IMG/VR virus record: IMGVR_UViG_3300028392_000029
Span: 62,001-126,000 of that record
Strand: one strand, 5' to 3'
DNA length: 64,000 nt
The position numbers were made by a program, and so were the translations under genes. The notes beneath the pieces are model-generated. The model saw only the letters and a list, made by a program, of their open reading frames with translations, ran no database searches and had not been told where the DNA came from. This document shows positions 19,101 to 61,100 of the stretch, piece by piece. Every line of letters begins with the position of its first letter. Within the stretch, counting starts at the first letter, position 1.

Positions 19101-22000
19101 ATATCAGTGGGCCCAATAATTCTAGCTTCAAAGATGCCGCCATCTCTAAACTCATCGGCAACTGCAACTGCACCTGTACCAGCACCACTAAATGTATAGG
19201 TTGCTGTTGAATAATTTTGTCCGGCATTAGAGAATTCTAATCTAAGAATTTTGTTATTTGCTTGGCCGGCAAAGGCTGCTTGAATTTGAGCTTGTTGGCT
19301 ACGATTATTAACTGTTGCGGCTAGCGGGACTTCGGTAGTGTCATATCCTTCAGCAACTGTTCCATATGTGCCATACGAACTATTACCGTTGGTAGCACGA
19401 ATTCTTCCACCGGCCTCTGCTAGATATCCAATATGTCCATAATAGTTAAACACTGATACTAGTTCTGTTAGTGCGCTAGGGCCTGTACACCATGCGCCAA
19501 TTCCATCGCTAATAACTGTGGTAAAATCGTTAGCCACGATTGATCGATTGCCACCGTTATGCAGTGTACCGTCAATCTTTACACCGGTACATCCGGTACC
19601 AAACATCGTAACGTTTTGCGCATAAGGAGATTTGCTGGTAATTTGTACACTAGTATCATTTGGTCCGGATCCGGGATCTAAACTAACAAATGCTCCGCCA
19701 GTTGGACGTGAAGTGAGATATTGATTAATTGGTGTAAGGCCGCCAGTCAATCCTTGTAAGGTCATATTTCTAATGCCTGTGCCGTTACGACAAAGGAACA
19801 TATTAGATCCTTCGTAGCCGGCTGCTGGTTGCACCACTGTACCGCGTAGTTCATCGCCGCATAGCGCAACACCTGCTGGAATACTGATTGGAAGAATTTC
19901 AGTATAAGTTCCAGTCTTAATAAAAATTGTAGCAGGTCCGATAACGTTTGCACAAGCATAACGGATGCTAGCCCAAGGTGTATTCACAGTTGTTCCACGA
20001 GTAGGTAAATCAATTCCACTCATAGCAACATAATATACAGCACCAATAATACCAAAATTATTCCAAGCCGGGGCAATATTTGTGTTATCAACTACACCAT
20101 TGGTAACTGCCGCAGTTGCACGAAGTAGTTGTCCTTGTGTACCTATTGGTATCGCTTTATTAGCAGTACCGTAAGTTGGTATATCGCCATAAGTCTGGAT
20201 AGCTACCCATTGGTCTCCAGCGGCGTATCTGTTCCAATAGATTGATGCATTTTGTATAGACCCGCCTGTGGTAAATCCTGTAGCTAATGTTTCAAAACTA
20301 GCTGTAGTATTAGTACAGGTTATTACTGTATATGTTCCGTTGTAAGCTGTTGGGGTTGTGTTTGATACAATGATTAAATTTCCTGGAGTATACGGGCTAT
20401 TAGCTTGTGTAGGGAAGGTAACTGTTCCCACACCGGTTACTGTTGGGGTAGCAGTGAAGGTTGTTCCAGATAATGTCAGTGTTCCAAAATTAATGTCAGC
20501 AGTACCAAGTGCTCCAAGATATGTTGATGCTAGTGCAATTGTTGTACCATCAATAATATTACCAATATAATAAGTACCAGCTGTTAATGCTCCTGCTCCT
20601 GTACCTGCTACTACAAAAGTTTCACCTATGTGTAGTCCTGTTGATGAACTAACTGTAACATTTACTCCACTGGTTGCAGTGATACTTCCTGTGCGAGTTG
20701 TTAATGCTCCAGTACCCAAAGCACCGGTGATCATCAACGACGTAAATGTATTATCGATTAACGGTGTATTACTTGTAGTTGCATTATGTAATTGTTTGCA
20801 AACATATGCTGTGCCATTGTAAGTAACAAGGTCGCCTGGAGCATATGATGTGGTCAATGCCCAGGTATTTCTCCACTGTACACCAGGAATTAATAATTGC
20901 CATGCCGATGTATCAGTGGGATCATTACCGGTGTTATCAGCAATTGCAACATAAAGTTGCCCATCACGACGTACAATCTCACCTACTTTATATCCCGGAG
21001 TTGGACTTGCTACATATTCACCTCTGATATTGTAACTCTTAGATAAAAGAGTCCAATCGGTTGCATCAGTTGACGGAATGTTACCTTGATTATTTGTAGT
21101 TGCGCTTACATACTGATATCCGCCGTACACTACAACATCGCCAACTACATATGATGCACTAACACTCCAAGTACTAGAAAATTCTAAACCAGGAACATAT
21201 ATTGAAAAATTTGTTGTGCTAAAAGTAGTAGTTGAAGTATGAGGAATGTTACAAAACCAAAGATCTGCACCGTACTTGACTATGTCGTTAAGTTTGTAAC
21301 GAGTCACTGATGCCCAGTTAGTTTTAAAATCTATACCACTATGTACTATAGTCCACTTGCTTTGATCAACTTCTAATCCAGACGATACAGATACATTGCT
21401 AGTGTGTCCAGTGACACACTTGTACACTATGCCGCCGTAACGGACTACATCACCTACTTTATATTGAACACTAGTCGACCAATCTGTTTTCCAATCTGAA
21501 CCGTAGCTGACCACAGCCCAGTTTGATTGATTTGCTTCTAGCGTAGCGCCTGTTTGGTGTCCGGTAAGGCAACGATATAACGTTGAGCCGTAGCGAACAA
21601 TGTCGCCCTTTTTAAATCTAGCACTGGCTGTCCAATTTTTAGACCATTCATCAGCTAGAGCGTATATAATCCAGTTTGCTTGATTTGCTTCAAGTCCTAG
21701 TAGTGCTGTTGCCGCAGAAGTGTGCCCAGCGGTACAAATATAAATTACACCACCGTAGGTAACATAATCGCCAATGTTGTATAGGGTACCTACAGCCCAA
21801 ACACCTTTCCATGTGTATCCATCAAACCATAAAGTCCAGTTGGCCGAATCTGTATAAAAATTTGCGCTGGCAGTGTTAGCCGATGTACACACATAGGATT
21901 TTCCACCGTAGTTTATTACATCGTCTTTAGCATACACTGTGCTGGTTGTCCAAACACCGCGCCATGTAAATCGTATTCTACTTATTTTAAAATCAGCCAT
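16112..22000 (-). CDS. Modular tail fibre / adhesin-like virion protein (1962 aa), paralogue of 3929..16057
   Basis: Same N-terminal repeats (MADFKISRIRFTWRGVW vs MAEFKLGRIKFVWQGNW), same NRSIVANDFTT..SDGIG.WCTG core and C-terminal block. Confidence 0.8.
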   Translation of the reverse strand: MADFKISRIRFTWRGVWTTSTVYAKDDVINYGGKSYVCTSANTASANFYTDSANWTLWFDGYTWKGVWAVGTLYNIGDYVTYGGVIYICTAGHTSAATALLGLEANQANWIIYALADEWSKNWTASARFKKGDIVRYGSTLYRCLTGHQTGATLEANQSNWAVVSYGSDWKTDWSTSVQYKVGDVVRYGGIVYKCVTGHTSNVSVSSGLEVDQSKWTIVHSGIDFKTNWASVTRYKLNDIVKYGADLWFCNIPHTSTTTFSTTNFSIYVPGLEFSSTWSVSASYVVGDVVVYGGYQYVSATTNNQGNIPSTDATDWTLLSKSYNIRGEYVASPTPGYKVGEIVRRDGQLYVAIADNTGNDPTDTSAWQLLIPGVQWRNTWALTTSYAPGDLVTYNGTAYVCKQLHNATTSNTPLIDNTFTSLMITGALGTGALTTRTGSITATSGVNVTVSSSTGLHIGETFVVAGTGAGALTAGTYYIGNIIDGTTIALASTYLGALGTADINFGTLTLSGTTFTATPTVTGVGTVTFPTQANSPYTPGNLIIVSNTTPTAYNGTYTVITCTNTTASFETLATGFTTGGSIQNASIYWNRYAAGDQWVAIQTYGDIPTYGTANKAIPIGTQGQLLRATAAVTNGVVDNTNIAPAWNNFGIIGAVYYVAMSGIDLPTRGTTVNTPWASIRYACANVIGPATIFIKTGTYTEILPISIPAGVALCGDELRGTVVQPAAGYEGSNMFLCRNGTGIRNMTLQGLTGGLTPINQYLTSRPTGGAFVSLDPGSGPNDTSVQITSKSPYAQNVTMFGTGCTGVKIDGTLHNGGNRSIVANDFTTVISDGIGAWCTGPSALTELVSVFNYYGHIGYLAEAGGRIRATNGNSSYGTYGTVAEGYDTTEVPLAATVNNRSQQAQIQAAFAGQANNKILRLEFSNAGQNYSTATYTFSGAGTGAVAVADEFRDGGIFEARIIGPTDITAGGAGYLTAGNQAGGGTNTYVTLASNDQNLISTYFGMRLIITSGTGVGQYGYIQYYNSSTKAAYISRESFPQVTVTSTSNANNSVTCLSTSTLQVGQAIMFGPSTQTTSVTASSSVDNSLTLASVSGIFVGENIIFAVNPTFNTIFGGVSPGTSYFVYAINGSKIQISTALPTSLGGTGTILNISTYAGTANMLATAQGVIGTLGWGTPYWVLTNNTLTNQITLSATAPGTFTGTSNSTQTISGIASTVGIIVGGAVTGPGIQAGTTVLGTGISTVTLSQATLTSVTGTWTYAGVPVPVYTANGNSYIGAVGFDNILPGQPIAPALDTTTVYSIEPKVSFSSPGFTGTLQVLPSTSTWAAMIYALGTFVAIDQVSSVATSTDGKNWLAATVNPTALAAGTAWTSLAFGQGFFVAVAGGASSSNLTSISNTGASWSAGGTLPVAANWSACAFGNGTFVAIAYGSTYSATSTSGTSWANGGSLPTSRNWSSIAYGSIGTWVAVASGTANAAYSTNNGSLWTPCTLPASSTWISVTWGNGRFVAIDQTNQSAYSFDGITWTINALPSTQTWTAVTYGQGLFFAVAANTSTAATSQDGLYWTPQIMPTSAPWSAVAFGNPTSIAGAVTPIWTAIAGTASNTAASVLTGPTTIGRVIVANSKVSMVKIYEPGGGYATTPTVTIYDPNATLAVTTACRTATGVLGNPTFLNRGNGYQTSTTTVAVNGDGYADQLQSSQYLYVSGLSQSPTPGAAITISGNNNLYRVVVITPLGSGNYLFQIAAALTISLAPVHGTTISIRLKYSQCRITGHDFLYIGTGNKAQTNYPNVDPLTAASYKQIAENNSGRVFQTSTDQDGNFKVGNLFAVQQASGIVTISANQFSLAGLTKLVIGGLSAGANSVTITSFSTDTYFVANSDTVVPTQKAVKAYLARNIAGGGSNAQTGAVIAGTVGLGGSQKIYSSVGQQILMKATVNIKGPNAGINGMMLAHSLFANSFSANN

Positions 22001-27860: not shown

Positions 27861-28883
27861 TTAAGCGTTATCGATCAACAATGAATCTGCTGTGGCTGCA
27901 GACATGTTCCACTTGACTTGTGATCCATCTACAAAAGCCGCATCTGTTCCAGTGCCACGTGCAATTGTAACTTTGCGTGATGTAATCTTGGTAGCAAAGT
28001 ATGTATAGCCAGCAGAGTCAAGTAAACGGATACTGCCTTCGCCAGCCGCTGAAGCAACTGAAGACTTCAATGCAACGATGCCTGTACGTGTACCGTCTGT
28101 TACTTTGAAACGATTTGTTGAAACTTGTTTAAGAATATCAACAGTAGTTGCTGAACCACCAGTTAAGTATGCTGTCATTAAGATTGTATTTTCTTGGTTA
28201 GTTGCTGAACCAACATTGCCAGTATCTACATTCAATACTGCTGTGGCTGTTAATGTGCCTTGTGTACCAGTTGACAATGTAACTGCCGGCACTGTTGTAT
28301 AACCAGAACCGCTTTCAGTAATTGTGAATCCAGTAATTGTACCTGCGGCTGCAACTGAACCACCTAATGTGATTGTTAAATCGTTTGTTGTAGCAACACC
28401 GCCTAAGCTAGCACCATCAATAACAATAGTGTTACCTGAAGCATAGCCTGTACCTTTAGTAGTACAAGTGATAGTTGTGCTTGCACCATAGCTTGTGCCA
28501 CCAGTACGTACAACTGTAAACACAGCACTAGTACCAGTACCGTTTGTTGATTTTTGTGTTAGGCCAGTAAAAGTCTGTGTTACTGCTACTGCTGTACCTG
28601 AACCAGTTAATGTTGTTACGTTAGTGCCAGATGTACCAGCGGCAATAGTTAACAATGCACCTGCTGGGCCTACTACTAAACTAGCTGTTGCACGAACACC
28701 ATTTGGTAGTGTTGGAGTTGCAATACTGATTTGTGATGCACCTGCTGTAAAACCTGATGAGTTGTTAGCACCAGCCAATGTGATACTTGCAATCCCTTCA
28801 CCGCCGATACCTTCATCAGTTGTAGTGCTTGCGGAACCGACGTTACGGTTACCAAAATATTTCTTATTTAAAGGACGTCCCAT
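27861..28883 (-). CDS. Virion structural protein (340 aa, Thr/Gly-rich)
   Basis: MGRPLNKKYFG start, ITESGSGYTTVPAVT repeat typical of T4-like structural proteins; AAGGAG RBS and TATAAATA upstream. Confidence 0.65.
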   Translation of the reverse strand: MGRPLNKKYFGNRNVGSASTTTDEGIGGEGIASITLAGANNSSGFTAGASQISIATPTLPNGVRATASLVVGPAGALLTIAAGTSGTNVTTLTGSGTAVAVTQTFTGLTQKSTNGTGTSAVFTVVRTGGTSYGASTTITCTTKGTGYASGNTIVIDGASLGGVATTNDLTITLGGSVAAAGTITGFTITESGSGYTTVPAVTLSTGTQGTLTATAVLNVDTGNVGSATNQENTILMTAYLTGGSATTVDILKQVSTNRFKVTDGTRTGIVALKSSVASAAGEGSIRLLDSAGYTYFATKITSRKVTIARGTGTDAAFVDGSQVKWNMSAATADSLLIDNA

Positions 28884-28970
28884 TTTGTTTTCTCCTTGTA
28901 GAAAAACGGCGTTCTAGGCCGTACGCGGTTGGATTTCCGCATAAAATCCACACCATGTGGATCATACATT
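28884..28970 (-). promoter_or_regulatory. Structured 5' leader of 27861..28883 with a terminator-like hairpin before the RBS
   Basis: Minus strand: AUCCACA-UGG-UGUGGAU; UAUGCGG-AAAUCCAA-CCGCGUA; ACGGC-CUAGAAC-GCCGU-UUUU; then AAGGAG. Confidence 0.5.
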
Positions 28971-28971
28971 G

Positions 28972-28979
28972 TATTTATA
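28972..28979 (-). promoter_or_regulatory. T4-type late promoter TATAAATA
   Basis: Exact consensus upstream of 27861..28883; further minus-strand TAAATA boxes in intergenic gaps at 3591, 16084, 24367, 33745, 34060 and 40925. Confidence 0.7.
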
Positions 28980-29721
28980 CGTAAGTGATTCGCATAGCTA
29001 CGTTGTCAATATATGCCGTATCAGTGTGTGGTGTAAGAACGTTGCTTCTAAAGGCTATTGCAACACCAAAGTTTACGTTAATTGTATCTATTAACTGTAT
29101 TGGACTATTCCATAAGTTTGTAGGAGATCCATAAATTTTATAGTTGTCTACTCCAGGATCTGCAATATTATCGCCGACTAGTTGTCCGTTTAGAACTAGT
29201 TGCACAACATAGTCTTGAACTCTAGATGCTCTGATAGAATCTATTTGAACTTCAATCCCCAGCAATGTTGATCCGTTGGGAGAAAATGCAAAGTTAGTAA
29301 ACCATAACTGGCTGGTTATTGTGGCAAATCGCTCTTGCCATAGACCTGATATTGTATGTAAAGGTTTAGCACTAGTGGCATACTTTGACACACCTCTACC
29401 AATGCTGGCTGCTGTATCTAGCCAGCTTATACTGTTATCCGTACTTACTTGAGTTACCAAGTTTGAAACAAGAAATTTGGTAGTTGTTGGTATAGGTGCT
29501 GGCGGTACTACCAGCACTGTTAGTACTAGTACTGAAAGTTTTTGAATATTATAATCATCTAATGTTCGACCAGGTTCTAAAATAGTACCATTGTAAGTTA
29601 ATTGTGGTTGTCCGGCAGGTGGACCTATTCTATCCTGTATTTTTGCTAGGACTCCTTCGATAGAATCAGAAGACTCTACATCAATTGTGATAGTAGACGG
29701 TACCTGAACAAATATTTGCAT
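28975..29721 (-). CDS. Ubiquitin-like domain (aa 1-~68) fused to a virion-type beta-sandwich domain; possible capsid decoration protein
   Basis: MQIFV...[21 protein letters not shown]...[14 protein letters not shown]: 40 of 76 positions identical to canonical ubiquitin in my manual alignment; no LRLRGG; Pro-rich linker; located directly after the major capsid gene. Confidence 0.85.
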
Positions 29722-38707: not shown

Positions 38708-39529
38708 ATGGCAAATAATCCTCTGCAACAGTATTTTAGACAACCTAAGATCTTTGTTAGTCTAGCCAGTAAAGGCACCTATAACGAACCAGGATCGCTA
38801 ACTGGCAATCTTGAAAGCATGCCAATATTTGGTATGACAGGCATGGACGAAATCGTTATTCGAACTCCTGATGCTTTGTTAAGCGGTGAAAGCACTGTAA
38901 AGGTACTAGAAAGTTGTTGCCCTAGTATCAAGAACGGATGGGATATTAGCACTCTTGATACCAACTTATTGTTTACTGCTATTAGAATTGCCACTTACGG
39001 AAATATGATGGCTGTTACACACAATTGTCCGGATTGTAATAACGAAAATGACTATGACCTAGATCTAGGCAAAGCTATTGAACACTATTCAACTTGCAAA
39101 TTTGATAATCGTGTGGTTGTAGACAATCTAGTAATTAAAATTAGACCATTAAACTATAAACAAAACACTGATATCAACATTAAAAATTTCCAACTGCAAC
39201 AACAGTTGTCTCAAGTTGAAGCTATCACTGATCCAACTGAGCAACAGAAAAAAATCAACGAATTGTTTGCCGCAATCGGTCTTATTCAAAATGACATGAT
39301 CACAGACTGTGTTGACAGTGTTGAGATTGAAACTACTAACGTTACCGAACGGGGTTACATCAAAGAATGGTTAGAGAATTGCGATAAATCTATTTTTGAT
39401 GCAATTAAAAAACAAATTGAAGAAAATCAAAAAACTTGGTTATTGCCCAACTATAAAGTTAAATGCAAAAAATGTGAAAAAGATAACGAAGTCAGTATAG
39501 AGTTAGATAATTCAAATTTTTTCGCATAA
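38708..39529 (+). CDS. gp26: Baseplate hub assembly chaperone (T4 gp26-like)
   Basis: NPLQQYFRQPK, MTGMDEI, LFTAIRIATYG, CPDC and CKKC Cys pairs, ends ...NFFA. Confidence 0.75.
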   Translation: MANNPLQQYFRQPKIFVSLASKGTYNEPGSLTGNLESMPIFGMTGMDEIVIRTPDALLSGESTVKVLESCCPSIKNGWDISTLDTNLLFTAIRIATYGNMMAVTHNCPDCNNENDYDLDLGKAIEHYSTCKFDNRVVVDNLVIKIRPLNYKQNTDINIKNFQLQQQLSQVEAITDPTEQQKKINELFAAIGLIQNDMITDCVDSVEIETTNVTERGYIKEWLENCDKSIFDAIKKQIEENQKTWLLPNYKVKCKKCEKDNEVSIELDNSNFFA

Positions 39530-39756
39530 GCCTAATTGGTCTCACACCCTATGAGATTGAAGAAAAGCTAGTTAGGCTAGATAACGAAATAAGAGCGTTT
39601 AAATCAGAGCTATTTAGAATCAGCTGGTACATGAGGGGTGGTATTACTGTAAATGATCTAATGTACACCTATAGCTATGACGACCGACTAGCCGCCTACG
39701 AGATCATTAAAGAAAATATTAAGTCAGTTGAAGAAACTGGCCTGCCTCTACTTTAA
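39511..39756 (+). CDS. gp51-like baseplate assembly segment in the -1 frame of gp26-like; probable frameshift extension (not in ORF track)
   Basis: Open frame FKFFRISLIGLTPYEIEEKLVRLDNEIRAFKSELFRISWYMRGGITVNDLMYTYSYDDRLAAYEIIKENIKSVEETGLPLL*; no ATG/GTG/TTG until 39631; slippery T TTT TTC at 39517-39523. Confidence 0.65.
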   Translation, partial: FKFFRISLIGLTPYEIEEKLVRLDNEIRAFKSELFRISWYMRGGITVNDLMYTYSYDDRLAAYEIIKENIKSVEETGLPLL

Positions 39757-40907
39757 TTTAGCTGTGCCTTTAATGCACGTTGTCCAGTTTTAGGATCTTG
39801 CATCCAACCAGTGCCAATATCTTTCCATTGCGCAATTGGACTAGCATTTGGTGCTAGCTTAAATCCACTTAGTAATTCAGGTTGCCCGCTGGCAGGGCCC
39901 GGTTTTGTAGCACTAGGTGTAGCTCCTTGTCCTTGATTAGCTTTAGATGTATCTGCCGGTGTATCATCAGTTTTATCGCCAGTAGTTTTATCAGCCGCAG
40001 GTTTGTCTCCAGTTGGACCTTGCTTAACACTCTTCATAAAATCAGGAGTTAGTGCATCTAATACTTGTACACCCTTAGCACCAATAAAATCTTGAATACC
40101 AAAGAATGATCCTGCCATAGTTTCTGCAATTCCTTTAGCTACATCGCTGTTGTTGAACATAGATAGAGCAACTGTGCCAACTACTTTATTACCTAAACCT
40201 GATACAGCACCGCCTAATTTTTCAGCACCTAACTTGGTAAGGAATCCGCCAAATATTTTTCCAGGGATTTTAGCAATTTTACCTACAGCAAAGTTTGCCA
40301 CCTCTCGACCAATTAGAATCTGCATTTCACGCTGACGATAAGCATTGTACCACTCACCGACATCTGTAAACTGCTCATATCCTGGCGGAATCTTTCCAGA
40401 CTTGACCCATTCTTCAGCATCCGTCATATGATTGTAGTACTCAAGGGCAGGTTGCCATAATTCATAAAGGTATGCGGCATCAAATCCAAGGCTAGCTAAT
40501 TTCTTACCACCTTCTTTGACCATCTCTAATTTACCCATACCAACAATTTTATCCAGGCCAAGCGTTCTGAGTCCACTGTCTGTTTTAGCTTGAGCCAGGA
40601 TCTTTGCATCAAGATCCGGTCTATGTCCTAACTGTTTAGCTGCCTCAGCAGGTGTAACTCCAGTTCTGCGAGCATAGCTGTTTACCTTTGCGGCATCAAT
40701 GGCCGCTTTTTCTTCAGCGGCTTTGGCAATAGTTATATTTCTAGATTTAGCAAAGTCAGCTAATTCTTGAGCACCTTGTTTAATCAAAGGTGTATCTCCT
40801 TTAAGTGCCTTAGCGGCCTTAAAACCAAGACTTCCTATACCACCTAATATATCAGCGGCTAGACCTTCTTGTGTTTGTTGTTCAGAGATTATTTCATAGA
40901 TTTTCAT
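39753..40907 (-). CDS. Hypothetical late protein, possible internal head protein
   Basis: 384 aa; N-terminus MKIYEIISEQ; TAAATA box at 40925-40930. Confidence 0.6.
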   Translation of the reverse strand: MKIYEIISEQQTQEGLAADILGGIGSLGFKAAKALKGDTPLIKQGAQELADFAKSRNITIAKAAEEKAAIDAAKVNSYARRTGVTPAEAAKQLGHRPDLDAKILAQAKTDSGLRTLGLDKIVGMGKLEMVKEGGKKLASLGFDAAYLYELWQPALEYYNHMTDAEEWVKSGKIPPGYEQFTDVGEWYNAYRQREMQILIGREVANFAVGKIAKIPGKIFGGFLTKLGAEKLGGAVSGLGNKVVGTVALSMFNNSDVAKGIAETMAGSFFGIQDFIGAKGVQVLDALTPDFMKSVKQGPTGDKPAADKTTGDKTDDTPADTSKANQGQGATPSATKPGPASGQPELLSGFKLAPNASPIAQWKDIGTGWMQDPKTGQRALKAQLN

Positions 40908-40934
40908 ATTAGGATCCTATCTGATATTTATCAC

Positions 40935-41415
40935 AGTTTAAAGTTGAACTACGTTCAACTGTGTTTATCGCTATCGCTCAAACACTGATTGTTTCTTTTA
41001 AGTAATTATAATATAACGCGAAGCGTTAAGATATTATCTAGATCGTTCAGTCACACTTTGCCCTAGCGGGCAAAGTTGTTTTTGGACATTATCTGAGTCG
41101 AACAATATCACTTAGCGTTAGCACTAAAACGTAGGCGGTCATCCTGTACCTACTCATGCTGTCTTTATATGACGGCGGCCTGCACACATACGCTAACACA
41201 TGTACAAACGTGGGGCTACTACCCCTCTTTTAACCTGGAAAATTCTTGCTGTTGATTAAACGGATTCTATAGGTATATTCCATCAACGTCCTGTAAAGGA
41301 TAGTAATCAACATCTCTGCTACCAAGCAGAACTACCCTGCCGTCACACATCAGAACGGATTCGGGGCACAATATCAGTCGCCTGTGCGGGCTTATTTGGC
41401 AGTTTTTTGCCTGGA
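40935..41415 (-). ncRNA. Unassigned highly structured non-coding element (large ncRNA or structured origin/primer region)
   Basis: Largest ORF-free gap in the window; more than ten stem-loops, several of which pair fully only on the minus strand through G-U wobbles. Confidence 0.55.
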
Positions 41416-41416
41416 T

Positions 41417-41848
41417 TTATTGAGCCTTGAGTATATGTGAACCATGTACACGCACTTGAATATGACCGTTATAATAGTCATTTGATTCTAGTACACGACG
41501 ACTAAATTGTTCACGAGCCTCTACGTATGAGCATTCTGCTTTGGATTTACAGTAAAAAAGTATTTCTCTTGTGAAGTTTGCTGTGCCTAATTCCGCAATA
41601 TCTTTGCTTAGTTCAGGCGACGATCCGTAATATTCACGCCAGTCTGAATCAATTTTACTGCGAATTTTCTTCTTTTTCTTTGTGCCGTTTTTAAGCGTTA
41701 CTGTTTTTGTGGTAGTTTTAGAGAATTTTGCTAATTTTTTGCCTATGTACTTACGTCCAGACAGTGTGTTAGTAATTAGATAAACATATCCTACACAATC
41801 TTCCGGTAACACTTCCACTAGTTGATTTTCATAAGTCCATGACATCAA
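41417..41848 (-). CDS. GIY-YIG endonuclease (T4 EndoII/DenA-like size)
   Basis: GYVYLITN...RKYIGKK, YYGSS, FTREIL, YVEAREQF, YYNGHI motifs; Lys-rich insertion TKTVTLKNGTKKKKKIRSK. Confidence 0.85.
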   Translation of the reverse strand: MMSWTYENQLVEVLPEDCVGYVYLITNTLSGRKYIGKKLAKFSKTTTKTVTLKNGTKKKKKIRSKIDSDWREYYGSSPELSKDIAELGTANFTREILFYCKSKAECSYVEAREQFSRRVLESNDYYNGHIQVRVHGSHILKAQ

Positions 41849-42115
41849 CTAGTTAGCGTTATCATCCCCTTGAGTCTTGCCTTTTTGAGCGGCCCGCCGA
41901 GCTTTACGTTCGTCTAACTGCTGTCTTTTTTCTATTTGCCAGAGCCTAATATCTTTACGTCTATCAGAACATACATTACGTATGTCCGATAGCAAATGCC
42001 TAACGCGAATACTGCTGGCATAGGTAGCTTCATTGAGCCACAGTTGATTCTCTTCGAAGTAAACTCGAAGTAATCGCATCAACTCTGCATGCAGATCTTC
42101 GTCTTGTTCTTTCAC
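41849..42115 (-). CDS. Hypothetical protein (88 aa, helical, basic)
   Basis: ORF overlaps the gp46 stop and abuts the nuclease start. Confidence 0.6.
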   Translation of the reverse strand: MKEQDEDLHAELMRLLRVYFEENQLWLNEATYASSIRVRHLLSDIRNVCSDRRKDIRLWQIEKRQQLDERKARRAAQKGKTQGDDNAN

Positions 42116-43893
42116 TCAGTTATTTCCAAATCATTGGCATAGCTAGTATAGCCATTTTCTTTGATAACTTTTAATACATTGTTCACACGTCCGATAAGTT
42201 CGTCCTTGTGAGAGATTAAGAAAATATTTTTCTTACGTTCACGAGCCATCTTTTTAAGCACTGCCAGTGCGCCCTCAACACCTGCGGCATCTAAGCCGTT
42301 GTCAATCAGTTCATCCACAAACAATAAGTTGATCTGCTGATATAGGCTTTCCCATACATCTCGGAAAGCCCACGACAAGCTCAATATAAGTCTATTGCGT
42401 TCACCTCGACTTAGATTATCAAAATCTAAGTCTTGCCCCAGCTGGGTGATCAGTACCGTAAGATCATTTTGGAATAGAACAGTATGGGGTAATCCCATCT
42501 TGTCTAGATAATAGGTCAAACGGTTGTTCAAATAGGCTAGGTTTTGATCTATGATCTTCTTGCGAATAAACGAATCTTTGCTGGTCAGCAGTTTAAGTAG
42601 GAACTCTTGATGCTCTTTTAAACTGTTAAGTTCGTTAACACCATCCCATACGATTTCTTGCATGGCAGTATTTTTTAATTCATCAATTTGTTCTTGGTAG
42701 GGATCACTTTCTCCGGCCTTAATCTCTAACTGTGTTTCTAGAGTCTTTAAATTATTCTGATGCTTTAGTGCTTCTTCTACAGTATCGTAATAGGTATCAG
42801 GACGTCCGGGCATCTCGCCGATAGCAGATAACTCTTTGTTAACCTTGGCAAGATCTTTTTCAACTTTATCGTGGTAGACGTTAGCTTCTGCTAGATGCTT
42901 AGTAGCATTGGCAGTCATTTCTTCATGCTTATGATCGTGAAGAGTCTGTTCACAGGCATGGCAAGTTTTGTTATCTAAGGTAGCAAGCTCGCTAGCGTAT
43001 TTTTTTACGCTTCGCTCCGCTTGCGCTATCGCGCTTTCTAACGTAGCCCGCTCTTTATTTAAACTAGCTAATTTTTGTTTCTGTTCTAAATATAACTTTA
43101 ATTCAGCATGGGCGGATATCTCCGCAGTGATGTCTACGTTTTCTAGTGCGATAATCGCACGACCGATCTTTTCTATTTCTTGATCATGTTGATTATTCCA
43201 AGCACTTTGTCGAACAATCAATGCATCAATACTTTTTTGTATGCCTTCATTGGCTTTCTTAGTTGCTTCTAGATTAGCACTTTCTTGTAAGATTGAATCT
43301 TTAGTCTGTTTAACTAGTTCTTTAAGAGTTTCTGCTTTTTCACTAAGCAGAGTAATGCCTAGTAACTGTTCAATAATAACTCGTTGGTCATTAGCTCGCA
43401 TACTGAGAAACGGCTCTGTATACGTATTAAGAGCAACAATATGCTTGAACATGTCGTGACTCATACCTAGCAGTTCATCTAAGTCTCGCTGGGTTTCACG
43501 CATATCTCCTTGTGAGTCGTCAGTTTCTTCGCCTTCTTGTTCTTGGTCATTAACAAAGAACTTCATTATAGAAGGTTTGCGTCCACGCTCAATACGATAG
43601 TCAGTCTCGTCTTTTTCGAAAGCTAGAGTAACTAACATGTTTCTATTGTTAATCTTATTAATAAGATTATCTTTTTTAATATTAGTAAGTGCATTACCAA
43701 ATAGTGCAAAACTCAGGGCATTAACAATAGTAGTCTTGCCCGTACCGTTACGACTTCCGTTATCGTCCCCACCTTGATCTAAGTTTTCACCTAGTACAAG
43801 TGTTAAATTTTCCGTGGCAAAGTTTACTGCTTGGGTTTGATTACCCACGCTCATAAAATTCTTAACTGTCAGTTCTTTAAGTTTAATGGTCAT
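42112..43893 (-). CDS. gp46: Recombination endonuclease ATPase subunit (gp46 / SbcC / Rad50-like)
   Basis: Walker A NGTGKT, zinc-hook CHAC within coiled coil, signature LSRGE, Walker B LLFVDE, ISH. Confidence 0.93.
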   Translation of the reverse strand: MTIKLKELTVKNFMSVGNQTQAVNFATENLTLVLGENLDQGGDDNGSRNGTGKTTIVNALSFALFGNALTNIKKDNLINKINNRNMLVTLAFEKDETDYRIERGRKPSIMKFFVNDQEQEGEETDDSQGDMRETQRDLDELLGMSHDMFKHIVALNTYTEPFLSMRANDQRVIIEQLLGITLLSEKAETLKELVKQTKDSILQESANLEATKKANEGIQKSIDALIVRQSAWNNQHDQEIEKIGRAIIALENVDITAEISAHAELKLYLEQKQKLASLNKERATLESAIAQAERSVKKYASELATLDNKTCHACEQTLHDHKHEEMTANATKHLAEANVYHDKVEKDLAKVNKELSAIGEMPGRPDTYYDTVEEALKHQNNLKTLETQLEIKAGESDPYQEQIDELKNTAMQEIVWDGVNELNSLKEHQEFLLKLLTSKDSFIRKKIIDQNLAYLNNRLTYYLDKMGLPHTVLFQNDLTVLITQLGQDLDFDNLSRGERNRLILSLSWAFRDVWESLYQQINLLFVDELIDNGLDAAGVEGALAVLKKMARERKKNIFLISHKDELIGRVNNVLKVIKENGYTSYANDLEITE

Positions 43894-55126: not shown

Positions 55127-58100
55127 TAATGTTAACCCTAACGGCAGCAATTCTGGTCTTACTTTAAATTTACTACCAGCTTTTTATAGAACAGAAGCTA
55201 ATAAGAAATTTTTACAAGCAACACTGGATCAGTTATATCAACCTGGCTCTATTAAAAAAACAAACGGCTATATTGGGCGAGAAAATGCTAAATCGTCTAC
55301 CGGATCAGATATATTTGTCGAGGCATCGGATAGTACACGACAAAATTATCAGTTGGAACCTGCATTAACTGTAACCGACTCGATCGGCAATGTGACATTT
55401 TTTAAAGACTATATTGATTATATCAATCAATTAAATGTGTTCGGTGCTAATACCAGCAACCATGCTCGACTAAACAAACAAGAATTTTATTCTTGGGATC
55501 CGCATATTGATTGGGACAAGTTTGTTAACTTTCAAAATTATTACTGGTTGCCTTACGGCCCTGATTTAATTACAATCTATGGACAACAGTTAGCCATTGA
55601 AAGTACGTATACTGTAACACTTGAGTCAGAATTAAATAATAATCAATATTTGTTCACGCCTAACGGTTTTACTCGAAATCCGGTACTACGATTATTTAGA
55701 GGACAAACATATACTTTTGAAATTAATAGTCCGGGAAATCCTTTCAGTTTTAAAACTGCCCGTAGCCTCGGTATTGCTGATAGATATGAAATCCCAACAT
55801 TAAGTGATCATGCAGTTACTAATGGTACAATTACATTTACAATACCGTCGGATGCCCCTAGCTTACTTTATTATCAAAGCGAGTCAGATTTGAATCTTGG
55901 TGGTGTTATCGCAATTTATAATATTACTGAAGATACATTTATTAATGTCACTGACGAGATACTTGGAAAAAAACAATATAAATTAGCAAACGGCACACAA
56001 TTAAGTAACGGAATGAAACTTGCGTTTGGCGGAAATGTATCCCCAGACATGTATATGTCAGGAAAATACTATGTTGATGGTGTTGGTACCTCTATCAGAT
56101 TAATTCCAGAAACAATTTTAGAAATTACAAGCCCATATACAACTGTCACTGATATCCTATTTGATTCTGATGCATTTGATACTGAACCGTTTGATAATGC
56201 AAGCGGTTTTGCAAACACTTTAGACTATATCGTAATTAATCGAGCATCGAGAGATTATAATCCGTGGAGTCGATATAATAGATGGTTTCATAAAGATGTT
56301 ATAAATGCCAGCTCGGCATTTAACAATGCTATTGCTAATTTAGATCAAAAATATCGAGCAATAAGACCTATTATTGAATTCAATGCAGATTTAAAACTAT
56401 TTAATTATGGTACAGTAGCACTTGACGATATCGATTTAGTTGACGACTTTACAACTGATGTATTTTCAACTATCGAAGGAACATTTGGCTATAATATTGA
56501 TTCAACAGCATTGCAAGAAGGCCATCGAATATTGTTTACAGCTGATACTGATATACTTGTAAAAAATAAAATTTTTGAAGTGCGATTTATTGACATACAG
56601 CATATTAATGGTGTAAAACAAATACATTTAGTTGAGATCATAGAACCTATAGAAAATCATGTTGTTCTAGTGAGACAAGGTAAGATAAATCAAGGACAAA
56701 GCTATTGGTTTAATGGGACAGCTTGGAAACTAGCTCAAAAGAAAACGGTTACTAATCAACCTCCGCTATTTGACATAGTTGATTCGAATAAGATAAGTTA
56801 TGGAAATACTGAAGTATATAACGGCTCGACCTTTACAGGAACCTCTATCTTTTCGTATAAAAAAGGTAAAGGCGTAACTGATCCTAGCTTAGGATTCCCG
56901 CTAGCATATCAAAATGTTAGTAATATTGGCGACATTGTTTTTAACTTTAATCTAGCAACTGATGCATTTGAATATAAGAAAACTACAGCAATAATTTCTC
57001 AGAAAATAAATGTTGGGTATCTTGTTACACAAGATTATGCAGGAAATGTTGTATATGAGAACGGCTGGAAAAGGTCAGTAGTTAATACTCTGCAAGCTGC
57101 CGTTAGACTATACAAAAATTCAAATAAGACTAATAATTTTAATTTAGATATTTTTGATGATGTTAATAACTTAGAGGATCTAGTGGTCCAAGTTTTTGTT
57201 AACGGCAAACGATTAGATTGGCCTCAATGGTCAATAAAATCTGAATCGGACTACAAACAGATTGTACTCAAGACTGATATCAGTCTCACAGATGTGCTAA
57301 CACTTAAAGCATATGCCGCTCAACCTATAAATTCTAAGGGCTATTATGAAATTCCTATAAGTCTGCAAAACAATCCTCTAAACGATGAAATTAATGAATT
57401 TACCCTTGGCGAAGTTATCGACCATGTTAATTCTATTGTCGATAATCTAGGAAAAATATTTGTTGGAGTATTTCCGGGCGAAAGCAATTTACGAGATTTA
57501 GGAAACTTGTCTGAGTTTGGAACTAAATTTGTTCAGCATAGCGGTCCATCTAGTTTATCGCTATATCATATTACCTCGCCTCAAAACAATATTGTTCAGG
57601 CTTTAGAACTTTCTAGAGATGAATATAGTAATTTTAAAAGAAATTTAATTGCAGTTGCAGAATCACTAGGAGTCGATGCTGATTCTCGAACACTGGTTGA
57701 CATTATTCTACTGCAAATTACTAAAGATACTCCTAAAACACACCCTTATTATTTTAGTGATATGCTACCTTTTGGTGCTAGTTTAATTACAAATCTAAAT
57801 GTAGTAGACTATAGGATAAAATTATATCCGCTAACAAATAGTTTTAATTTAGAAAAACTGTCACCTAGTGCAGTTGGTGTATATTTAAATAACACACAAC
57901 TAATACACGGTCGTGATTATACTTTTGTCAGTCAAAATTTTATAAATGTTTCTGCACCATTAGTAAACGGCGATATAATCACAACATATGAATATGAAAG
58001 TACAGATGCATGCTTTGTGCCAGAAACTCCGACTAAATTAGGTATATGGCCGAAATATGAACCTAAATTATATTTAGATACATCGTATGTTACTCCCCGA

Positions 58101-61100
58101 TGGATGATACAAGGCCACGACGGAAGTCAGGTGCTAGCATATGGTACGTACGGAGATTCTGGACATAGTGACTACCGCGACGGCATTTTATTAGAATTTG
58201 AAAAACGAATTTATAATAATATTAAAATTAATTACGATATTTCTATCTGCGATTTTGCTAAAATCATTCCTAGCTACAATCGAACCAATGACTATAGTAT
58301 TGATGAATTCAACAAGGTATTGGCTCCCTCTTTTTATAAATGGACAGGGCTAGTAGGGGTTGATTTTACTAAACCACTAAGCTATGATCGTAGCAATTCT
58401 TTTACATATAATTATGCAGGACATAGTTCCCCCGATGGGCGTAATGTTCCGGGATACTGGAGAGGTATATATCGTTGGATGCTAGACACTGATAGACCTA
58501 ACCTGTGCCCCTGGGAAATGCTAGGATTCTCAATCGAACCTAAATGGTGGACAACACTATACGGCCCATCACCATATACCAATGACAACAGACCAATGTG
58601 GCAAGACATTGCAGATGGCATGGTTAGAGAGCCAGGAAAACCTGCAGTCTATCTAAGTGATTATGCTAAGCCGTTTTTAATGGATCATATTCCTGTTGAC
58701 GAAAATGGTAATATTGTTAGTCCTGCAATTTCTGGGCTGGCATCTGGAGTATTCACAGTATCAACTGACAATAATTTTGTATTTGGCGATGTAAGCCCTG
58801 TAGAATCTGCATGGCGCAGAAGTAGCCATTATCCATTTAGTGTAGTACTAGCATCAATATTATTGACTCCAGCACAATCATTTGGAGCACTATTAGACAG
58901 ATCAAGAATTGTAAGGAATATAGCTGGACAGCTTATAAATTCTGATACAGGATTACGTATAAGACCGGCTGATGTAGTTTTACCTAGTATATACTCAAGT
59001 ACGACTAGGGTACAGACAGCGGGGATTATAAACTACATAGTTGATTATATTTTGCATTTTACATTTAGCAATAATCTTAAATCATACAATATGTATAGGA
59101 CAGAGTTAAAAACTTTGTTGCCAAAGTTGTCGTATCGTGTTGGGTCATTTACAAATAAAGAGCAATTTAATCTATTATTAGATTCTAAAACGCCGCTATC
59201 AGCGGGAAGCGTGTTTATCCCAAAAGAAGATTATGACATTATTTTGAATACATCTAGTACAGTACGTAAAATTACCTATAGCGGTGTAATAATAACAAAA
59301 CTACAAACAGGATTTGAGGTTAAAGGTTATAGTATCACCCAGCCTTATTTTAAATACTACCGATATATAAAGACTGGTGCTAAAATTAATATTGGTGGTA
59401 TCTCAGAAACATATTCTACATGGACTGCGTATCAACAATACGGTGCCGGTACTAATGTAAGATATAATAATGTTTATTACAGAGTTCAGTCAACGCATAC
59501 TGCGGCCGCTACATTTAATCCAGCGTACTATCAAGCATTGCCAGACCTGCCAATAGTAGGCGGAGCCAATGCTGCCTTACGAAGTGTCTGGGATCGTACG
59601 GAATCAATAGATGTTCCGTACGGTACTTTATTCTCTTCTATACAAGATGTAGTGGATTTCCTGCTAGGATACGGCGAGTGGTTAAAAGACCAAGGATTTA
59701 TATTTGATGAATTCAACGCTAAATTAGGTACAGTAAGCAATTGGGAGTCAAGTGCAAAAGAATTTTTGTTCTGGACTACTCAAAACTGGAGTGCTAGTAC
59801 AACTAAGTGGCAAGATTGGACTCCAACTATATCAGTCCCATACGGGAATATAATTCGATATAATGGAGATTATTATAGCGCATTATTTAATGTTCCTCCG
59901 TCTGAAATTTTTGATACTAACTTATATACGAAGTTAGCAGGACTTAGCGATATTGGTAGCTCAGTCCTTAGCGTTAGCCCGTCTGCATCAAAATTAGTTT
60001 TCAATGCTCCTCTTACAGTCGTTGAAGATATCAATAACCCATTCAACGGCTATGAAATTTTTAAAGTAGACGGCACACCATTGAGCTCAATTTTTCTAGA
60101 TAGCTATAGAAACGGTAATCTAGTAAGCTATACTACAAAAACAACAGATGGGATTTATTGTGCTAGTTTTTATCTAGTTCAACTAGAGCATGTGGCTATT
60201 TTAAATAATAATACAATTTTTAATGATACATTGTATAATCCCGGTACAGGTTATAGACAAGAAAGAATTAAACTTGCCGGATATATAACATCTGGGTGGT
60301 ACGGCGGTTTAGACATTCCTGGATTTATCTTTGATCAAGCAAAAATTCAAGAGTGGGAACCTTGGAAAGATTATGCATTAGGTGATACAGTCAGCTATCA
60401 AAGTTTTTATTATAGTGCCACAGCTTTTATAGCAGGTGCCTTAGTATTTAAAGCATCTCTATGGACAAAACTTACAGAAAAACCGACTCCGAAATTATTA
60501 CCCAACTGGACAAATATTGCTACTCAATTTACTGATTTTTACAGTTTAGATGATGATAACTTTAGTTCAACACAGCAAAAAGTTGCTCATCATCTAATTG
60601 GATATCAGAAACGTCGATACCTTGGCAATATTATTAAAGATGATGTTAGTGAATTTAAATTTTATCAGGGAATGGTTCGAGAAAAAGGAACTTTAAATGT
60701 TCTTAAAAAATTATTTGATGTATTAAGTTCTGAAAATAAAGAAAGTTTAGTTTTTTATGAAGAGTGGGCGTTACGGGTAGGGCAATACGGTGCTAGTAAT
60801 TCTTTTGAAAATATAGAATTTGTTTTAGATGAAGCATTATTTAGAAATAACCCTCAAGGATACTTGTTATTAAATCAACAAGATCCAACACTTAATGTGT
60901 TTATTAATCAGCAAACTCCTAATTCTGTTTATTTAAAACCTTTGAACTATAATAGTTCTCCGTGGCCTGCATTGCCTACATACAATCAATATTTTCGAGA
61001 TGCAGGATATGTTGATTCTGCTGATGTATTCTTAACGTTAGGATCGCTATCGGATATTACATCTCAAGATATTACTACATTCAGTAATGGTGCGTATATT

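What the first reader, a model, noticed from the sequence alone, without database searches (positions are those of the whole stretch)
40908..41416. ~500-nt hairpin-dense non-coding element with minus-strand-specific G-U pairing
Seen: the largest ORF-free gap contains AGTTGAAC/GTTCAACT (40942-40960), GTGTTT/AAACAC (40961-40985), TAACGC/GCGTTA (41015-41029) and ACTTTGCCC/GGGCAAAGT (41055-41076) nested inside GATATT...AATATC (41030-41109). It also contains TCTGCT/AGCAGA (41315-41330), GTTGATT/AATCAAC (41251-41311) and GCACA/TGTGC (41366-41387). Four stems pair fully only as minus-strand RNA using G-U: UUAGUG-CUAA-CGCUAA (41112-41127), GUAGGU...GCCUAC (41131-41153), GUACAUGUG-UUAGCG-UAUGUGUGC (41182-41205) and GGGGU-AGUA-GCCCC (41212-41225). 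An AT-rich run (40988-41016) lies near the 3' end. Inference: a large, unassigned structured RNA co-transcribed with gp55-47-46-nuclease. It could be an ornate phage ncRNA, or an R-loop primer RNA at a replication origin (compare ColE1 RNA II and transcript-primed T4 origins).
Basis: partly seen in the sequence, partly recalled or inferred. Interest (0 to 1): 0.8.

Follow-up and report, generated by a model that had tools for sequence, protein, structure and literature searches.

The report
Large folded phage RNA, partly known
The 509-base gap encodes a roughly 460-nucleotide, intricately folded non-coding RNA whose first third is the known but unexplained Polynucleobacter-1 motif, and whose larger, undescribed remainder is conserved in hundreds of freshwater T4-like phages.

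Summary
Window 40908-41416 has no credible ORF and carries a conserved, minus-strand structured RNA of about 460 nt.

- **Known part.** The 5' third (41249-41392) is a full-length match to Rfam RF01718, Polynucleobacter-1 (74 bits against a threshold of 37). The element is therefore not "unassigned".
- **New part.** The 3' two thirds match no Rfam family. Across 38 diverse phage relatives, 89% of cells pair (about 39% in slid controls) and 50 of 71 pairs show compensatory changes. Two pseudoknots are supported.
- **Conservation.** This 3' core is more widely kept than the Rfam domain. A second phage lineage has the core without RF01718.
- **Phage context.** The RNA sits after a catalytic-domain-only SegE-type GIY-YIG gene (102 of 103 RNA-first loci; the exception is a chance match).
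- **Bacterial context.** A related RNA stands alone in Polynucleobacter chromosomal islands with no GIY-YIG.
- **Nuclease without RNA.** Phage Melnitz has the nuclease but not the RNA.

I read it as an autonomous, trans-acting folded RNA made as the tail of the gp55-47-46-nuclease unit. It is unlikely to be a nuclease cofactor, and there is no origin signal. Its biochemical function is unknown. Two repeated modules co-vary by identity (A/A or G/G), which remains unexplained.

The parts
41417..41845 (-). 142-aa SegE-type GIY-YIG nuclease, catalytic domain only. It is the gene directly 5' of the RNA in phages.
   Evidence: Pfam PF19835 at E 3.6e-33 over residues 3-129; phrog_447. It stays 75-91% identical across loci whose gp46 is only 47-85% identical.
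41398..41411 (-). Small leader hairpin GGCA-AAAAAC-UGCC between the stop codon and the RNA body. The AGGCA motif is also present in phage lineage B.
   Evidence: Sequence; alignments A1 and lineage B. Conservation is partial.
41249..41392 (-). 5' domain, the Polynucleobacter-1 RNA motif (RF01718).
   Evidence: 74.3 bits against a gathering score of 37, E 3.2e-15, model positions 1-141 of 141. The same hit occurs in 15 of 20 related phage loci and in all 8 bacterial loci scanned.
41212..41225 (-). Hairpin GGGG-UAGUAG-CCCC.
   Evidence: Helices 1 and 2. The outer pairs are 96% kept, with G-C to A-U changes.
41178..41209 (-). 12-bp hairpin GUUUGUACAUGU / AUGUGUGCAGGC, rich in G-U, with loop GUUAGCGU.
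   Evidence: Helix 3: 12 of 12 pairs have compensatory changes and 93.6% of cells pair.
41112..41196 (-). Pseudoknot 1: the hairpin loop UUAGCGU (41190-41196) pairs with ACGCUAA (41112-41118).
   Evidence: Helix 4: 7 of 7 pairs co-vary and 98.9% pair. The bacterial lineage has the equivalent CCACUUA/UAAGUGG with its own co-variation (by inspection).
41121..41173 (-). Conserved core CCGCCGUCAUAUAAAGAC...GGUACAGGAUGACCGCC. It contains pseudoknot 2 (GUCAU 41169-41173 with AUGAC 41138-41142) and nested helices GCAU/GUGC and UAGG/CCUA.
   Evidence: Helices 5-8: 97-100% paired, with C-G to U-A at 20 against 18 and G-C to A-U at 22 against 15. Long invariant runs in A2 and A3.
41086..41100 (-). Twin module 1: CGACUCAGAUAAUGU.
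   Evidence: Invariant ACUC-GAUAAU. Positions 41099 and 41094 co-vary by identity with 41044 and 41039.
41055..41076 (-). Hairpin ACUUUGCCC-GCUA-GGGCAAAGU between the twin modules.
   Evidence: Helix 10: kept in all sequences, with register shifts in the alignment.
41031..41045 (-). Twin module 2: CGAUCUAGAUAAUAU.
   Evidence: It can pair with module 1 as UCAGAU/AUCU(A)GA (helix 9: 100% paired, but invariant apart from A-U against G-U).
41015..41029 (-). UUCG-loop hairpin AACGC-UUCG-GCGUU.
   Evidence: Helix 11: 4 of 5 pairs have compensatory changes.
40986..41014 (-). Variable A/U-rich linker.
   Evidence: Poorly conserved and length-variable in A1 and A2.
40961..40985 (-). Hairpin GUGUUU-GAGC-GAUA-GCGA-U-AAACAC, with tandem G-A pairs and a GNRA-type loop.
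   Evidence: The UGAGCG..AGCGAA motif is kept in phage lineages A and B and in bacteria. nhmmer matches this hairpin plus the next one in all 13 bacterial loci, E down to 7e-7.
40942..40960 (-). Terminal hairpin AGUUGAAC-GUA-GUUCAACU followed by UUUAAA. It is the likely 3' end or terminator.
   Evidence: Helices 14 and 15: 7 of 8 pairs have compensatory changes. It is the last conserved element in every lineage.
40926..40934 (-). T4-type late-promoter-like GAUAAAUA, about 20 nt before the ATG (40905-40907) of the 384-aa downstream gene. It marks the end of the RNA unit.
   Evidence: [G/T]ATAAATA recurs at the same place in most sequences of A1. Its match to the T4 late-promoter consensus TATAAATA is from established knowledge.

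Best explanation
Window about 41400 to 40940, minus strand, encodes one non-coding RNA of about 460 nt.

**Architecture (shown).**
- The 5' domain is the known Polynucleobacter-1 motif.
- The larger 3' domain is not in Rfam. It holds a compact core with two pseudoknots.
- That core is followed by two near-identical 15-nt modules flanking a hairpin, then a UUCG hairpin and an A-rich linker.
- It ends with a G-A/GNRA hairpin and a terminal hairpin.

**Expression (inferred).** It is transcribed as the tail of the gp55-gp47-gp46-88aa-GIY-YIG unit. It ends at, or is protected by, the terminal hairpin. The next gene restarts from its own late promoter.

**Function (inferred).** It works as an autonomous, trans-acting folded RNA: a scaffold for a protein or nucleic-acid partner, or a ribozyme-type RNA. 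It is unlikely to be a dedicated partner of the nuclease or a cis-regulator, and nothing points to a replication primer.

**The twin modules (inferred).** I think they present the same surface twice, either to each other through purine-purine or base-triple contacts, or to one ligand bound twice.

The biochemical activity is unknown.
For: **Real structured RNA.**
- RF01718 matches at 74 bits.
- On 38 relatives, 89.3% of cells pair against 37-41% in slid controls.
- 50 of 71 pairs show compensatory change, and 0 of 500 shuffles reach the observed values.
- Both pseudoknots pair in 97-99% of cells.

**Non-coding.** The gap has no credible ORF.

**Strand.** Frequent G-U pairs fit only the minus strand.

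**Autonomy.**
- Related RNAs with the RF01718 domain and the same two 3' hairpins lie in 13 Polynucleobacter/Burkholderiaceae loci with no GIY-YIG. There they sit divergent from a DUF6641 gene.
- A conserved promoter-like TTGCCA-18-TAAATT lies upstream in two of these loci.
- The phage RNA persists when another ORF is inserted between it and the nuclease gene (L005, L006/7, L029, L039).
- Phage Melnitz has a 51%-identical nuclease but no RNA.
- No column of the nuclease gene co-varies with the twin modules.

**The 3' core is the conserved part.** Phage lineage B has the core (R1, E 1e-10 to 1e-3) but no RF01718 hit even at E up to 1.

**Expression hint.** Metatranscriptome contigs of relatives cover the RNA and the nuclease gene.
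Against: - No direct evidence exists for a discrete stable transcript, its ends or any activity.
- The read evidence is assembled contigs from RNA libraries chosen because they hold this sequence. They may include DNA.
- In phages the RNA follows the nuclease gene in every real case (102 of 102). A functional link cannot be excluded.
- Homology of the central core between phage and bacterial RNAs rests on motif order seen by eye. The covariance model R1 does not find the bacterial core even with filters off.
- A trans-acting role is inferred from architecture and context only.
Confidence: 0.5

Rival explanations
1. Cis-acting 3' end module. The fold is a 3'-UTR that terminates early or middle transcription before the late gene. 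It also shields the gp46/47/nuclease message from 3' exonucleases.
For: - The RNA starts 20-60 nt after the nuclease stop codon, with no convincing promoter of its own.
- It ends with a conserved hairpin followed by UUU and then a late-promoter-like motif.
- It is always the last element of the co-directional gene string.
Against: - About 460 nt with two pseudoknots and long invariant single-stranded runs is far more than a terminator or stabiliser needs.
- In bacteria the related RNA has no co-directional upstream gene.
- The U-tail is weak, so the terminator scan does not call the terminal hairpin on the minus strand.
Confidence: 0.2
2. Partner of the GIY-YIG nuclease. The RNA would supply targeting, restraint (antitoxin-like) or scaffolding to a nuclease that lacks a DNA-binding domain.
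For: - Adjacency holds in 102 of 102 real RNA-first phage loci and in about 66 of 71 nuclease-first loci.
- The protein is a catalytic domain only.
- It is unusually well conserved.
- The twin modules could act as paired recognition segments.
Against: - The RNA occurs without the nuclease in bacteria.
- The nuclease occurs without the RNA in Melnitz. None of 50,697 deposited phage records, including 496 that encode a homologue, matches the RNA.
- ORFs are inserted between the two in several phages.
- There is no hypervariable guide-like segment and no co-variation with the protein.
- No second copy of the module sequence exists in the 64-kb window or in the bacterial loci.
Confidence: 0.15
3. 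Replication-origin transcript. The RNA would form an R-loop and prime DNA synthesis, as ColE1 RNA II or T4 oriF/oriG transcripts do.
For: - The length is similar to RNA II.
- It contains an A/T-rich stretch.
- It lies next to recombination and replication genes.
Against: - The GC-skew minimum is near 46 kb, at the gene-orientation switch.
- The constraint is on RNA tertiary structure, not on a DNA unwinding element.
- No match is found in 72,556 plasmids.
- The related RNA is in bacterial chromosomal islands.
Confidence: 0.04
4. Decoy or mimic in a phage-host conflict. The Polynucleobacter island RNA would belong to a host or satellite system, and the phage copy would titrate its protein partner. 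This is analogous to pseudo-ToxI RNAs.
For: - The RNA is the only element shared between phages and the bacterial islands.
- The islands are variable, rich in ORFans and carry a recombinase.
Against: - PADLOC finds no defence-system protein among the neighbours tested.
- DUF6641 is only partly coupled to the RNA. Of 59 metagenomic loci, 19 have the full RNA and 9 more match only the 3' hairpins.
- The hosts of these phages are not known.
Confidence: 0.08

Closest known systems
Polynucleobacter-1 RNA motif (Rfam RF01718; Weinberg et al. 2010, PMC2864571)
   Same: - The 5' domain here is a full-length match above threshold.
- The gene context is the one originally reported: downstream of the GOS11034 family, with possible homology to a cyanophage P-SSM2 gene.
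- Function is unknown in both.
   Different: - The Rfam model covers 141 nt. The conserved RNA here is about 460 nt in phages and about 550-600 nt in bacteria.
- It has a 3' domain with two pseudoknots that is more widely conserved than the Rfam domain.
- The 2010 authors found no example in a sequenced purified phage. Here it sits in T4-like phage contigs among gp46, gp47, gp55 and baseplate genes.
GOLLD, ROOL and OLE: large 'ornate' bacterial and phage RNAs (Rfam; cryo-EM in PMC12286853)
   Same: - Size class above 400 nt.
- Many helices with tertiary-type motifs.
- GOLLD and ROOL are phage- or prophage-borne.
- No known biochemical function.
   Different: - No Rfam match to any of them (E up to 10).
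- Different hosts (freshwater T4-like phages, Burkholderiaceae).
- Different neighbours.
- Oligomerisation is untested.
Nuclease- or recombinase-adjacent guide RNAs of mobile elements (omega RNA/HEARO with IscB; IS110 bridge RNA)
   Same: - A structured RNA next to a small nuclease gene in a mobile genome.
- Two internal modules whose variable positions must match each other, as the core positions of the two bridge-RNA loops must.
   Different: - No hypervariable guide, no transposon ends and no target copies were found.
- The nuclease family is different.
- RNA and nuclease occur apart.
ColE1 RNA II and T4 origin transcripts
   Same: Several hundred nucleotides of structured transcript in a replication-gene neighbourhood.
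   Different: - No origin signal.
- Conservation pattern of a tertiary fold.
- Absent from plasmids.

Membership tests
Rfam RF01718 Polynucleobacter-1 RNA | Covariance-model score at or above the curated gathering score, full length. | tested here: met
   74.3 bits against 37, model positions 1-141 of 141, at window 41249-41392 minus strand.
Rfam RF01718 Polynucleobacter-1 RNA | Model helices present: the 5' hairpin, the GCAGUAGC-type hairpin, and the long-range stem enclosing two hairpins. | tested here: met
   The cmscan alignment shows GCACA/UGUGC, UCUGC/GCAGA and UUGAUU/AAUCAA paired. The second hairpin has non-canonical pairs flagged.
Rfam RF01718 Polynucleobacter-1 RNA | Location downstream of the GOS11034-type gene (Weinberg 2010). 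| tested here: inconclusive
   It lies downstream of a SegE-type GIY-YIG gene with cyanophage homologues. 15 of 20 loci holding that gene carry the motif. I could not check the identity of this gene with GOS11034 or PSSM2_218 directly.
Group I intron carrying a GIY-YIG homing endonuclease | Intron core (P3-P9) recognisable, plus interrupted exons. | tested here: not met
   No Intron_gpI hit at E up to 10. The genes directly upstream differ between loci and abut the nuclease gene. The bacterial copies have no ORF and no exons.
GOLLD / ROOL / HEARO / OLE and other large Rfam RNAs | Covariance-model match. | tested here: not met
   Only RF01718 is reported in 39500-42500 at E up to 10.
Origin-priming transcript (ColE1 RNA II type) | Coincidence with a replication origin (skew switch, plasmid-replicon context). 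| tested here: not met
   The cumulative GC-skew minimum is near 46 kb. No plasmid match. Origin activity itself is not testable with these tools.
Intrinsic terminator | G+C-rich hairpin followed by a run of at least 5 U. | tested here: not met
   The terminal hairpin is followed by UUUAAA only. The scan does not call it on the minus strand.
Proposed extended family (3' double-pseudoknot core) | Match to model R1, built from 32 lineage-A phage cores. | tested here: met
   Window 41011-41183 scores 154.5 bits by construction. Independent lineage-B loci score 26-57 bits, E 1e-10 to 8e-4, full length. The bacterial cores are not detected.

The most novel reading that the evidence does not exclude
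The twin modules are paired recognition segments that read the same short nucleic-acid sequence twice. That would make this a new kind of RNA that bridges or aligns two identical DNA or RNA sites for a nuclease in phages or a small tyrosine recombinase in the bacterial islands. Alternatively, they form an unprecedented natural purine-purine, parallel-type contact that organises a catalytic fold.
Probability: 0.07. Interest if true: 0.9.

Novelty: new variant of a known kind. Interest (0 to 1): 0.62.

Why it matters
**A rare size class.** Large, intricately folded bacterial and phage RNAs are rare. Nearly all those understood are ribozymes or cores of ribonucleoprotein machines.

**What changes for Polynucleobacter-1.** This motif has sat in Rfam since 2010 as a 141-nt "sRNA" of unknown role.
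- It appears to be the optional front end of an RNA three to four times larger.
- That RNA has two pseudoknots.
- It is carried by a very abundant group of uncultured freshwater T4-like phages, and by chromosomal islands of Polynucleobacter, a dominant lake bacterium.

**What becomes possible.**
- It gives the family a proper definition.
- It supplies the phage assignment the original authors suspected but could not show.
- It offers a cultivable organism, P. asymbioticus, in which the function can be tested.

**A structural clue.** The identity-type covariation of the two modules is unusual and worth solving.

Tried and rejected
**Alternative identities tested and rejected.**
- Coding potential: all six frames of the gap are full of stops. 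The 49-codon read-through frame after the nuclease stop is not conserved.
- tRNA or tmRNA: none in the window or the bacterial loci.
- Group I or II intron, GOLLD, ROOL, HEARO or ribozymes: no Rfam hit.
- Origin: the skew analysis is negative.

**Searches for targets or further copies.**
- Extra copies or targets of the twin-module sequence: chance level in the window and none consistent in the bacterial loci.
- A third co-varying strand for the twin modules: none in the nuclease gene, the RNA or 330 nt downstream.

**Searches of other collections.**
- Isolated phages and plasmids: no DNA match.
- The bacterial-lineage motif in viral contigs: none.

**Neighbouring proteins.**
- Island proteins have no homologues in the phage loci.
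- DUF6641 function: nothing from Pfam, PADLOC, the ESM Atlas or the literature.
- Solved structures for the nuclease: no sequence hit.

**Models and measures that fell short.**
- Model R1 could not bridge to the bacterial core.
- My crude ORF-free-gap measure upstream of DUF6641 was uninformative.

The GATATT/AATATC and UUAGUG/CGCUAA stems fail on covariation.

**An error corrected.** I briefly thought larger ORF-free gaps existed at 55-64 kb. That region is one giant ORF running off the window.

Full report
**What is there.** Window 40908-41416 lies between two minus-strand genes. Upstream in the sense of transcription is a 142-aa protein (41417-41845). It consists only of a SegE-type GIY-YIG nuclease domain (Pfam PF19835, E 3.6e-33; phrog_447). 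Before it come an 88-aa ORF, gp46 (SbcC/Rad50-like), gp47 (SbcD/Mre11-like) and the gp55 late sigma factor. All are on the minus strand with overlapping stop and start codons. Downstream is a 384-aa protein of unknown function (39753-40907). The gap has no ORF above 36 aa in any frame. It is the largest ORF-free stretch of the window. An apparent larger gap at 55-64 kb is one giant ORF that runs off the window end. No tRNA is present.

**Part of it is known.** Against Rfam 15, window 41249-41392 (minus strand) is a full-length match to RF01718, Polynucleobacter-1 RNA. It scores 74.3 bits against a gathering score of 37, E 3e-15. The only paper in the library that mentions the family is its 2010 description. 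Its supplement says the motif lies mostly downstream of genes of family GOS11034. It also notes possible homology to a cyanophage P-SSM2 gene, and that no example was found in a sequenced purified phage. Nothing else in 39500-42500 matches any Rfam family at E up to 10.

**The conserved element is much longer than the Rfam motif.**
- More than 583 viral contigs encode a 75-91% identical nuclease.
- In 15 of 20 of these loci, RF01718 follows the stop codon by 20-60 nt.
- BLAST of the whole gap shows that dozens of loci align over nearly all 500 nt at 70-82% identity.
- In a 21-sequence alignment, conservation runs from just after the stop codon to a terminal hairpin. It stops right before a T4-late-promoter-like [G/T]ATAAATA and the ATG of the next gene.
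- RNAalifold finds 81 pairs, 45 of them with compensatory changes.

**Structure of the undescribed 3' domain.** I aligned 38 diverse phage sequences (A2) and wrote a structure with two pseudoknots. The counts are:
- 89.3% of cells form standard pairs, against 37-41% when the partners are slid.
- 50 of 71 pairs carry two-sided changes.
- None of 500 shuffles reaches any observed measure.

The best-supported elements are:
- a 12-bp hairpin rich in G-U (41178-41209; 12 of 12 pairs co-vary);
- pseudoknot 1 between that hairpin's loop UUAGCGU and ACGCUAA at 41112-41118 (7 of 7 pairs co-vary, 98.9% paired);
- pseudoknot 2, GUCAU with AUGAC (97% paired);
- the nested helices GCAU/GUGC and UAGG/CCUA (99-100% paired);
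- the UUCG hairpin;
- the terminal hairpin.

Long single-stranded runs are invariant, for example GGUAC.GG....CCGCC, ACUC.GAUAAU and AUCU.GAUAAUA. The enclosing GATATT/AATATC helix and the local hairpin UUAGUG/CGCUAA are not conserved. The frequent G-U pairs fix the functional strand as the minus strand.

**Which part is the core.**
- A profile of the 3' domain finds it in about 66 of 71 nuclease loci that have enough downstream DNA. This includes loci where another ORF has been inserted between nuclease and RNA.
- A second phage lineage (L016, L034, L044 and others) has the 3' core. Model R1 scores these at 26-57 bits, E 1e-10 to 8e-4.
- That lineage has a different 5' region and no RF01718 hit even at E up to 1.
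- The part missing from Rfam is therefore the more conserved one.

**Linkage to the nuclease.**
- I sampled by an RNA motif alone (GTGACT-N5-ATCTRGATAATA). Of 103 viral loci with enough upstream DNA, 102 have the nuclease gene ending 256-423 nt upstream, nearly all at 337-423 nt.
- The single exception is a chance match inside a coding region.
- The gene always sits downstream of gp46, with variable genes in between and variable genes on either strand after the RNA. It is syntenic rather than hopping.
- The nuclease stays 75-91% identical while gp46 ranges from 47 to 85%.
- The nuclease family is much wider than the RNA. 496 deposited phage genomes encode a homologue, all below 60% identity and often mislabelled "NAD synthetase".
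- None of the 50,697 phage records matches the RNA.
- The closest isolate, Methylophilales phage Melnitz (51% identical protein), has only a 148-nt unstructured spacer and no hit to either domain.

**A bacterial lineage without the nuclease.**
- The flanks printed in the 2010 raw alignment showed a similar 3' extension in Polynucleobacter.
- A 24-mer from it retrieved 13 loci in Polynucleobacter and other Burkholderiaceae genomes, including chromosomes of 1.3-2.2 Mb.
- All 8 loci I scanned carry RF01718 at 70-102 bits.
- All 13 carry the same two 3' hairpins at the expected place (nhmmer, E down to 7e-7).
- By inspection they show the same order of motifs. This includes a co-varying equivalent of pseudoknot 1, and twin modules that read CGAAAGU where the phages read AUAAURU.

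Their context differs from the phages:
- There is no GIY-YIG.
- A DUF6641 gene lies divergently next to the RNA in 11 of 11 loci.
- A 188-aa tyrosine recombinase lies about 1 kb downstream in 8 of 13.
- The surroundings are ORFans and an AAA ATPase.
- A promoter-like TTGCCA-18-TAAATT lies 70-90 nt upstream of the Rfam domain in two loci.
- None of the island proteins has a relative in the phage loci.

Two limits apply:
- Model R1 does not detect the bacterial core even without filters. Homology of the middle part rests on inspection only.
- Sampling by DUF6641 in metagenomes gave the full RNA in 19 of 59 usable loci and a match to only the 3' hairpins in 9 more. The rest had nothing detectable and no RF01718. 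That coupling is partial too.

The bacterial motif is absent from viral contigs and from plasmids.

**An unexplained feature: the twin modules.**
- Modules CGACUCAGAUAAUGU (41100-41086) and CGAUCUAGAUAAUAU (41045-41031) flank a hairpin. They co-vary by identity, not by complementarity.
- In 83 distinct phage sequences, 41094/41039 are A/A 60 times and G/G 23 times, with no exception. Positions 41099/41044 are A/A 56 times and G/G 22 times.
- On a tree built without these columns, each pair changed together at least 10 independent times (sign test p 0.002).
- The two positions 5 nt apart inside one module are not significantly linked. That argues against linkage or gene conversion.
- No third column co-varies with them.
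- Lineage B shows a third such position, matched in 15 of 15 sequences.

Possible readings are a bulge-base triple, symmetric purine-purine contacts in a pseudo-two-fold fold, or one ligand read twice. I found no extra copies of the sequence nearby.

**Expression.** Four lake metatranscriptome runs hold contigs of relatives that cover the RNA and the nuclease gene. One 422-nt contig spans 41086-41399. These are assembled contigs from libraries chosen because they hold this sequence, and they could include DNA. This is weak support only.

**Interpretation.**
- That this is a genuine, conserved structured RNA and a member of RF01718 is close to certain.
- That RF01718 is only the 5' domain of a much larger RNA is well supported.
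- The evidence favours an autonomous RNA gene product acting in trans. The reasons are its tertiary-type architecture, its stand-alone bacterial copies, the separability of RNA and nuclease, and the absence of any guide-like variable segment.
- In phages it is made as the tail of the gp55-47-46-nuclease transcription unit and is closed by the terminal hairpin. These steps are inferred, not shown.
The last has no support: the GC-skew minimum is near 46 kb.

**Novelty.** The instance is a new member of a known family. The finding as a whole extends that family:
- from 141 nt to about 460 nt and more;
- with two pseudoknots and twin modules;
- with a firm home in T4-like phage genomes;
- with a second phage lineage that lacks the Rfam domain.

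I did not find this described in Rfam 15 or in the searchable literature.

Noticed in passing
window 28881-28962 (minus strand): A second Rfam candidate RNA, freshwater-2 (RF02980, 75.9 bits against a threshold of 49.9). It lies between two minus-strand ORFs (27861-28883 and 28975-29721).
   Followed up: no
window 3929-16057, 16112-22000 (minus strand) and 55127-64000 (plus strand): Three giant ORFs: 4042 aa, 1962 aa, and at least 2957 codons still open at the window end. The last is not listed by the ORF tools because it has no stop inside the window.
   Followed up: partly
window 41417-41845 and loci L001-L080: The domain-only GIY-YIG protein stays 75-91% identical across phages whose gp46 has diverged to 47-57%. 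Homologues in about 500 deposited phage genomes are often labelled 'NAD synthetase', which looks like a propagated misannotation.
   Followed up: partly
window 41094/41039 and 41099/41044: Identity-type covariation (A/A or G/G) between two direct-repeat modules of the RNA, arising at least 10 independent times. No structural explanation is established.
   Followed up: yes
L201-L213 (Polynucleobacter and other Burkholderiaceae): The bacterial RNA sits in variable islands beside a DUF6641 gene, a 188-aa tyrosine recombinase and an AAA ATPase. About ten metagenomic DUF6641 loci (L215, L217, L218, L220-L224, L270, L290) match mainly the two 3' hairpins about 650-900 nt upstream. That hints at a further diverged RNA lineage.
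   Followed up: partly
L123 (IMGVR_UViG_3300025358_000182): A 276-aa ORF lies between the nuclease gene and the RNA core. The RF01718 domain is absent, yet the core scores 50 bits with model R1.
   Followed up: partly
window 41055-41076, plus strand: On the plus strand, the central hairpin followed by TGTTTTTGG scores as a terminator-like site. No plus-strand gene runs into it.
   Followed up: no
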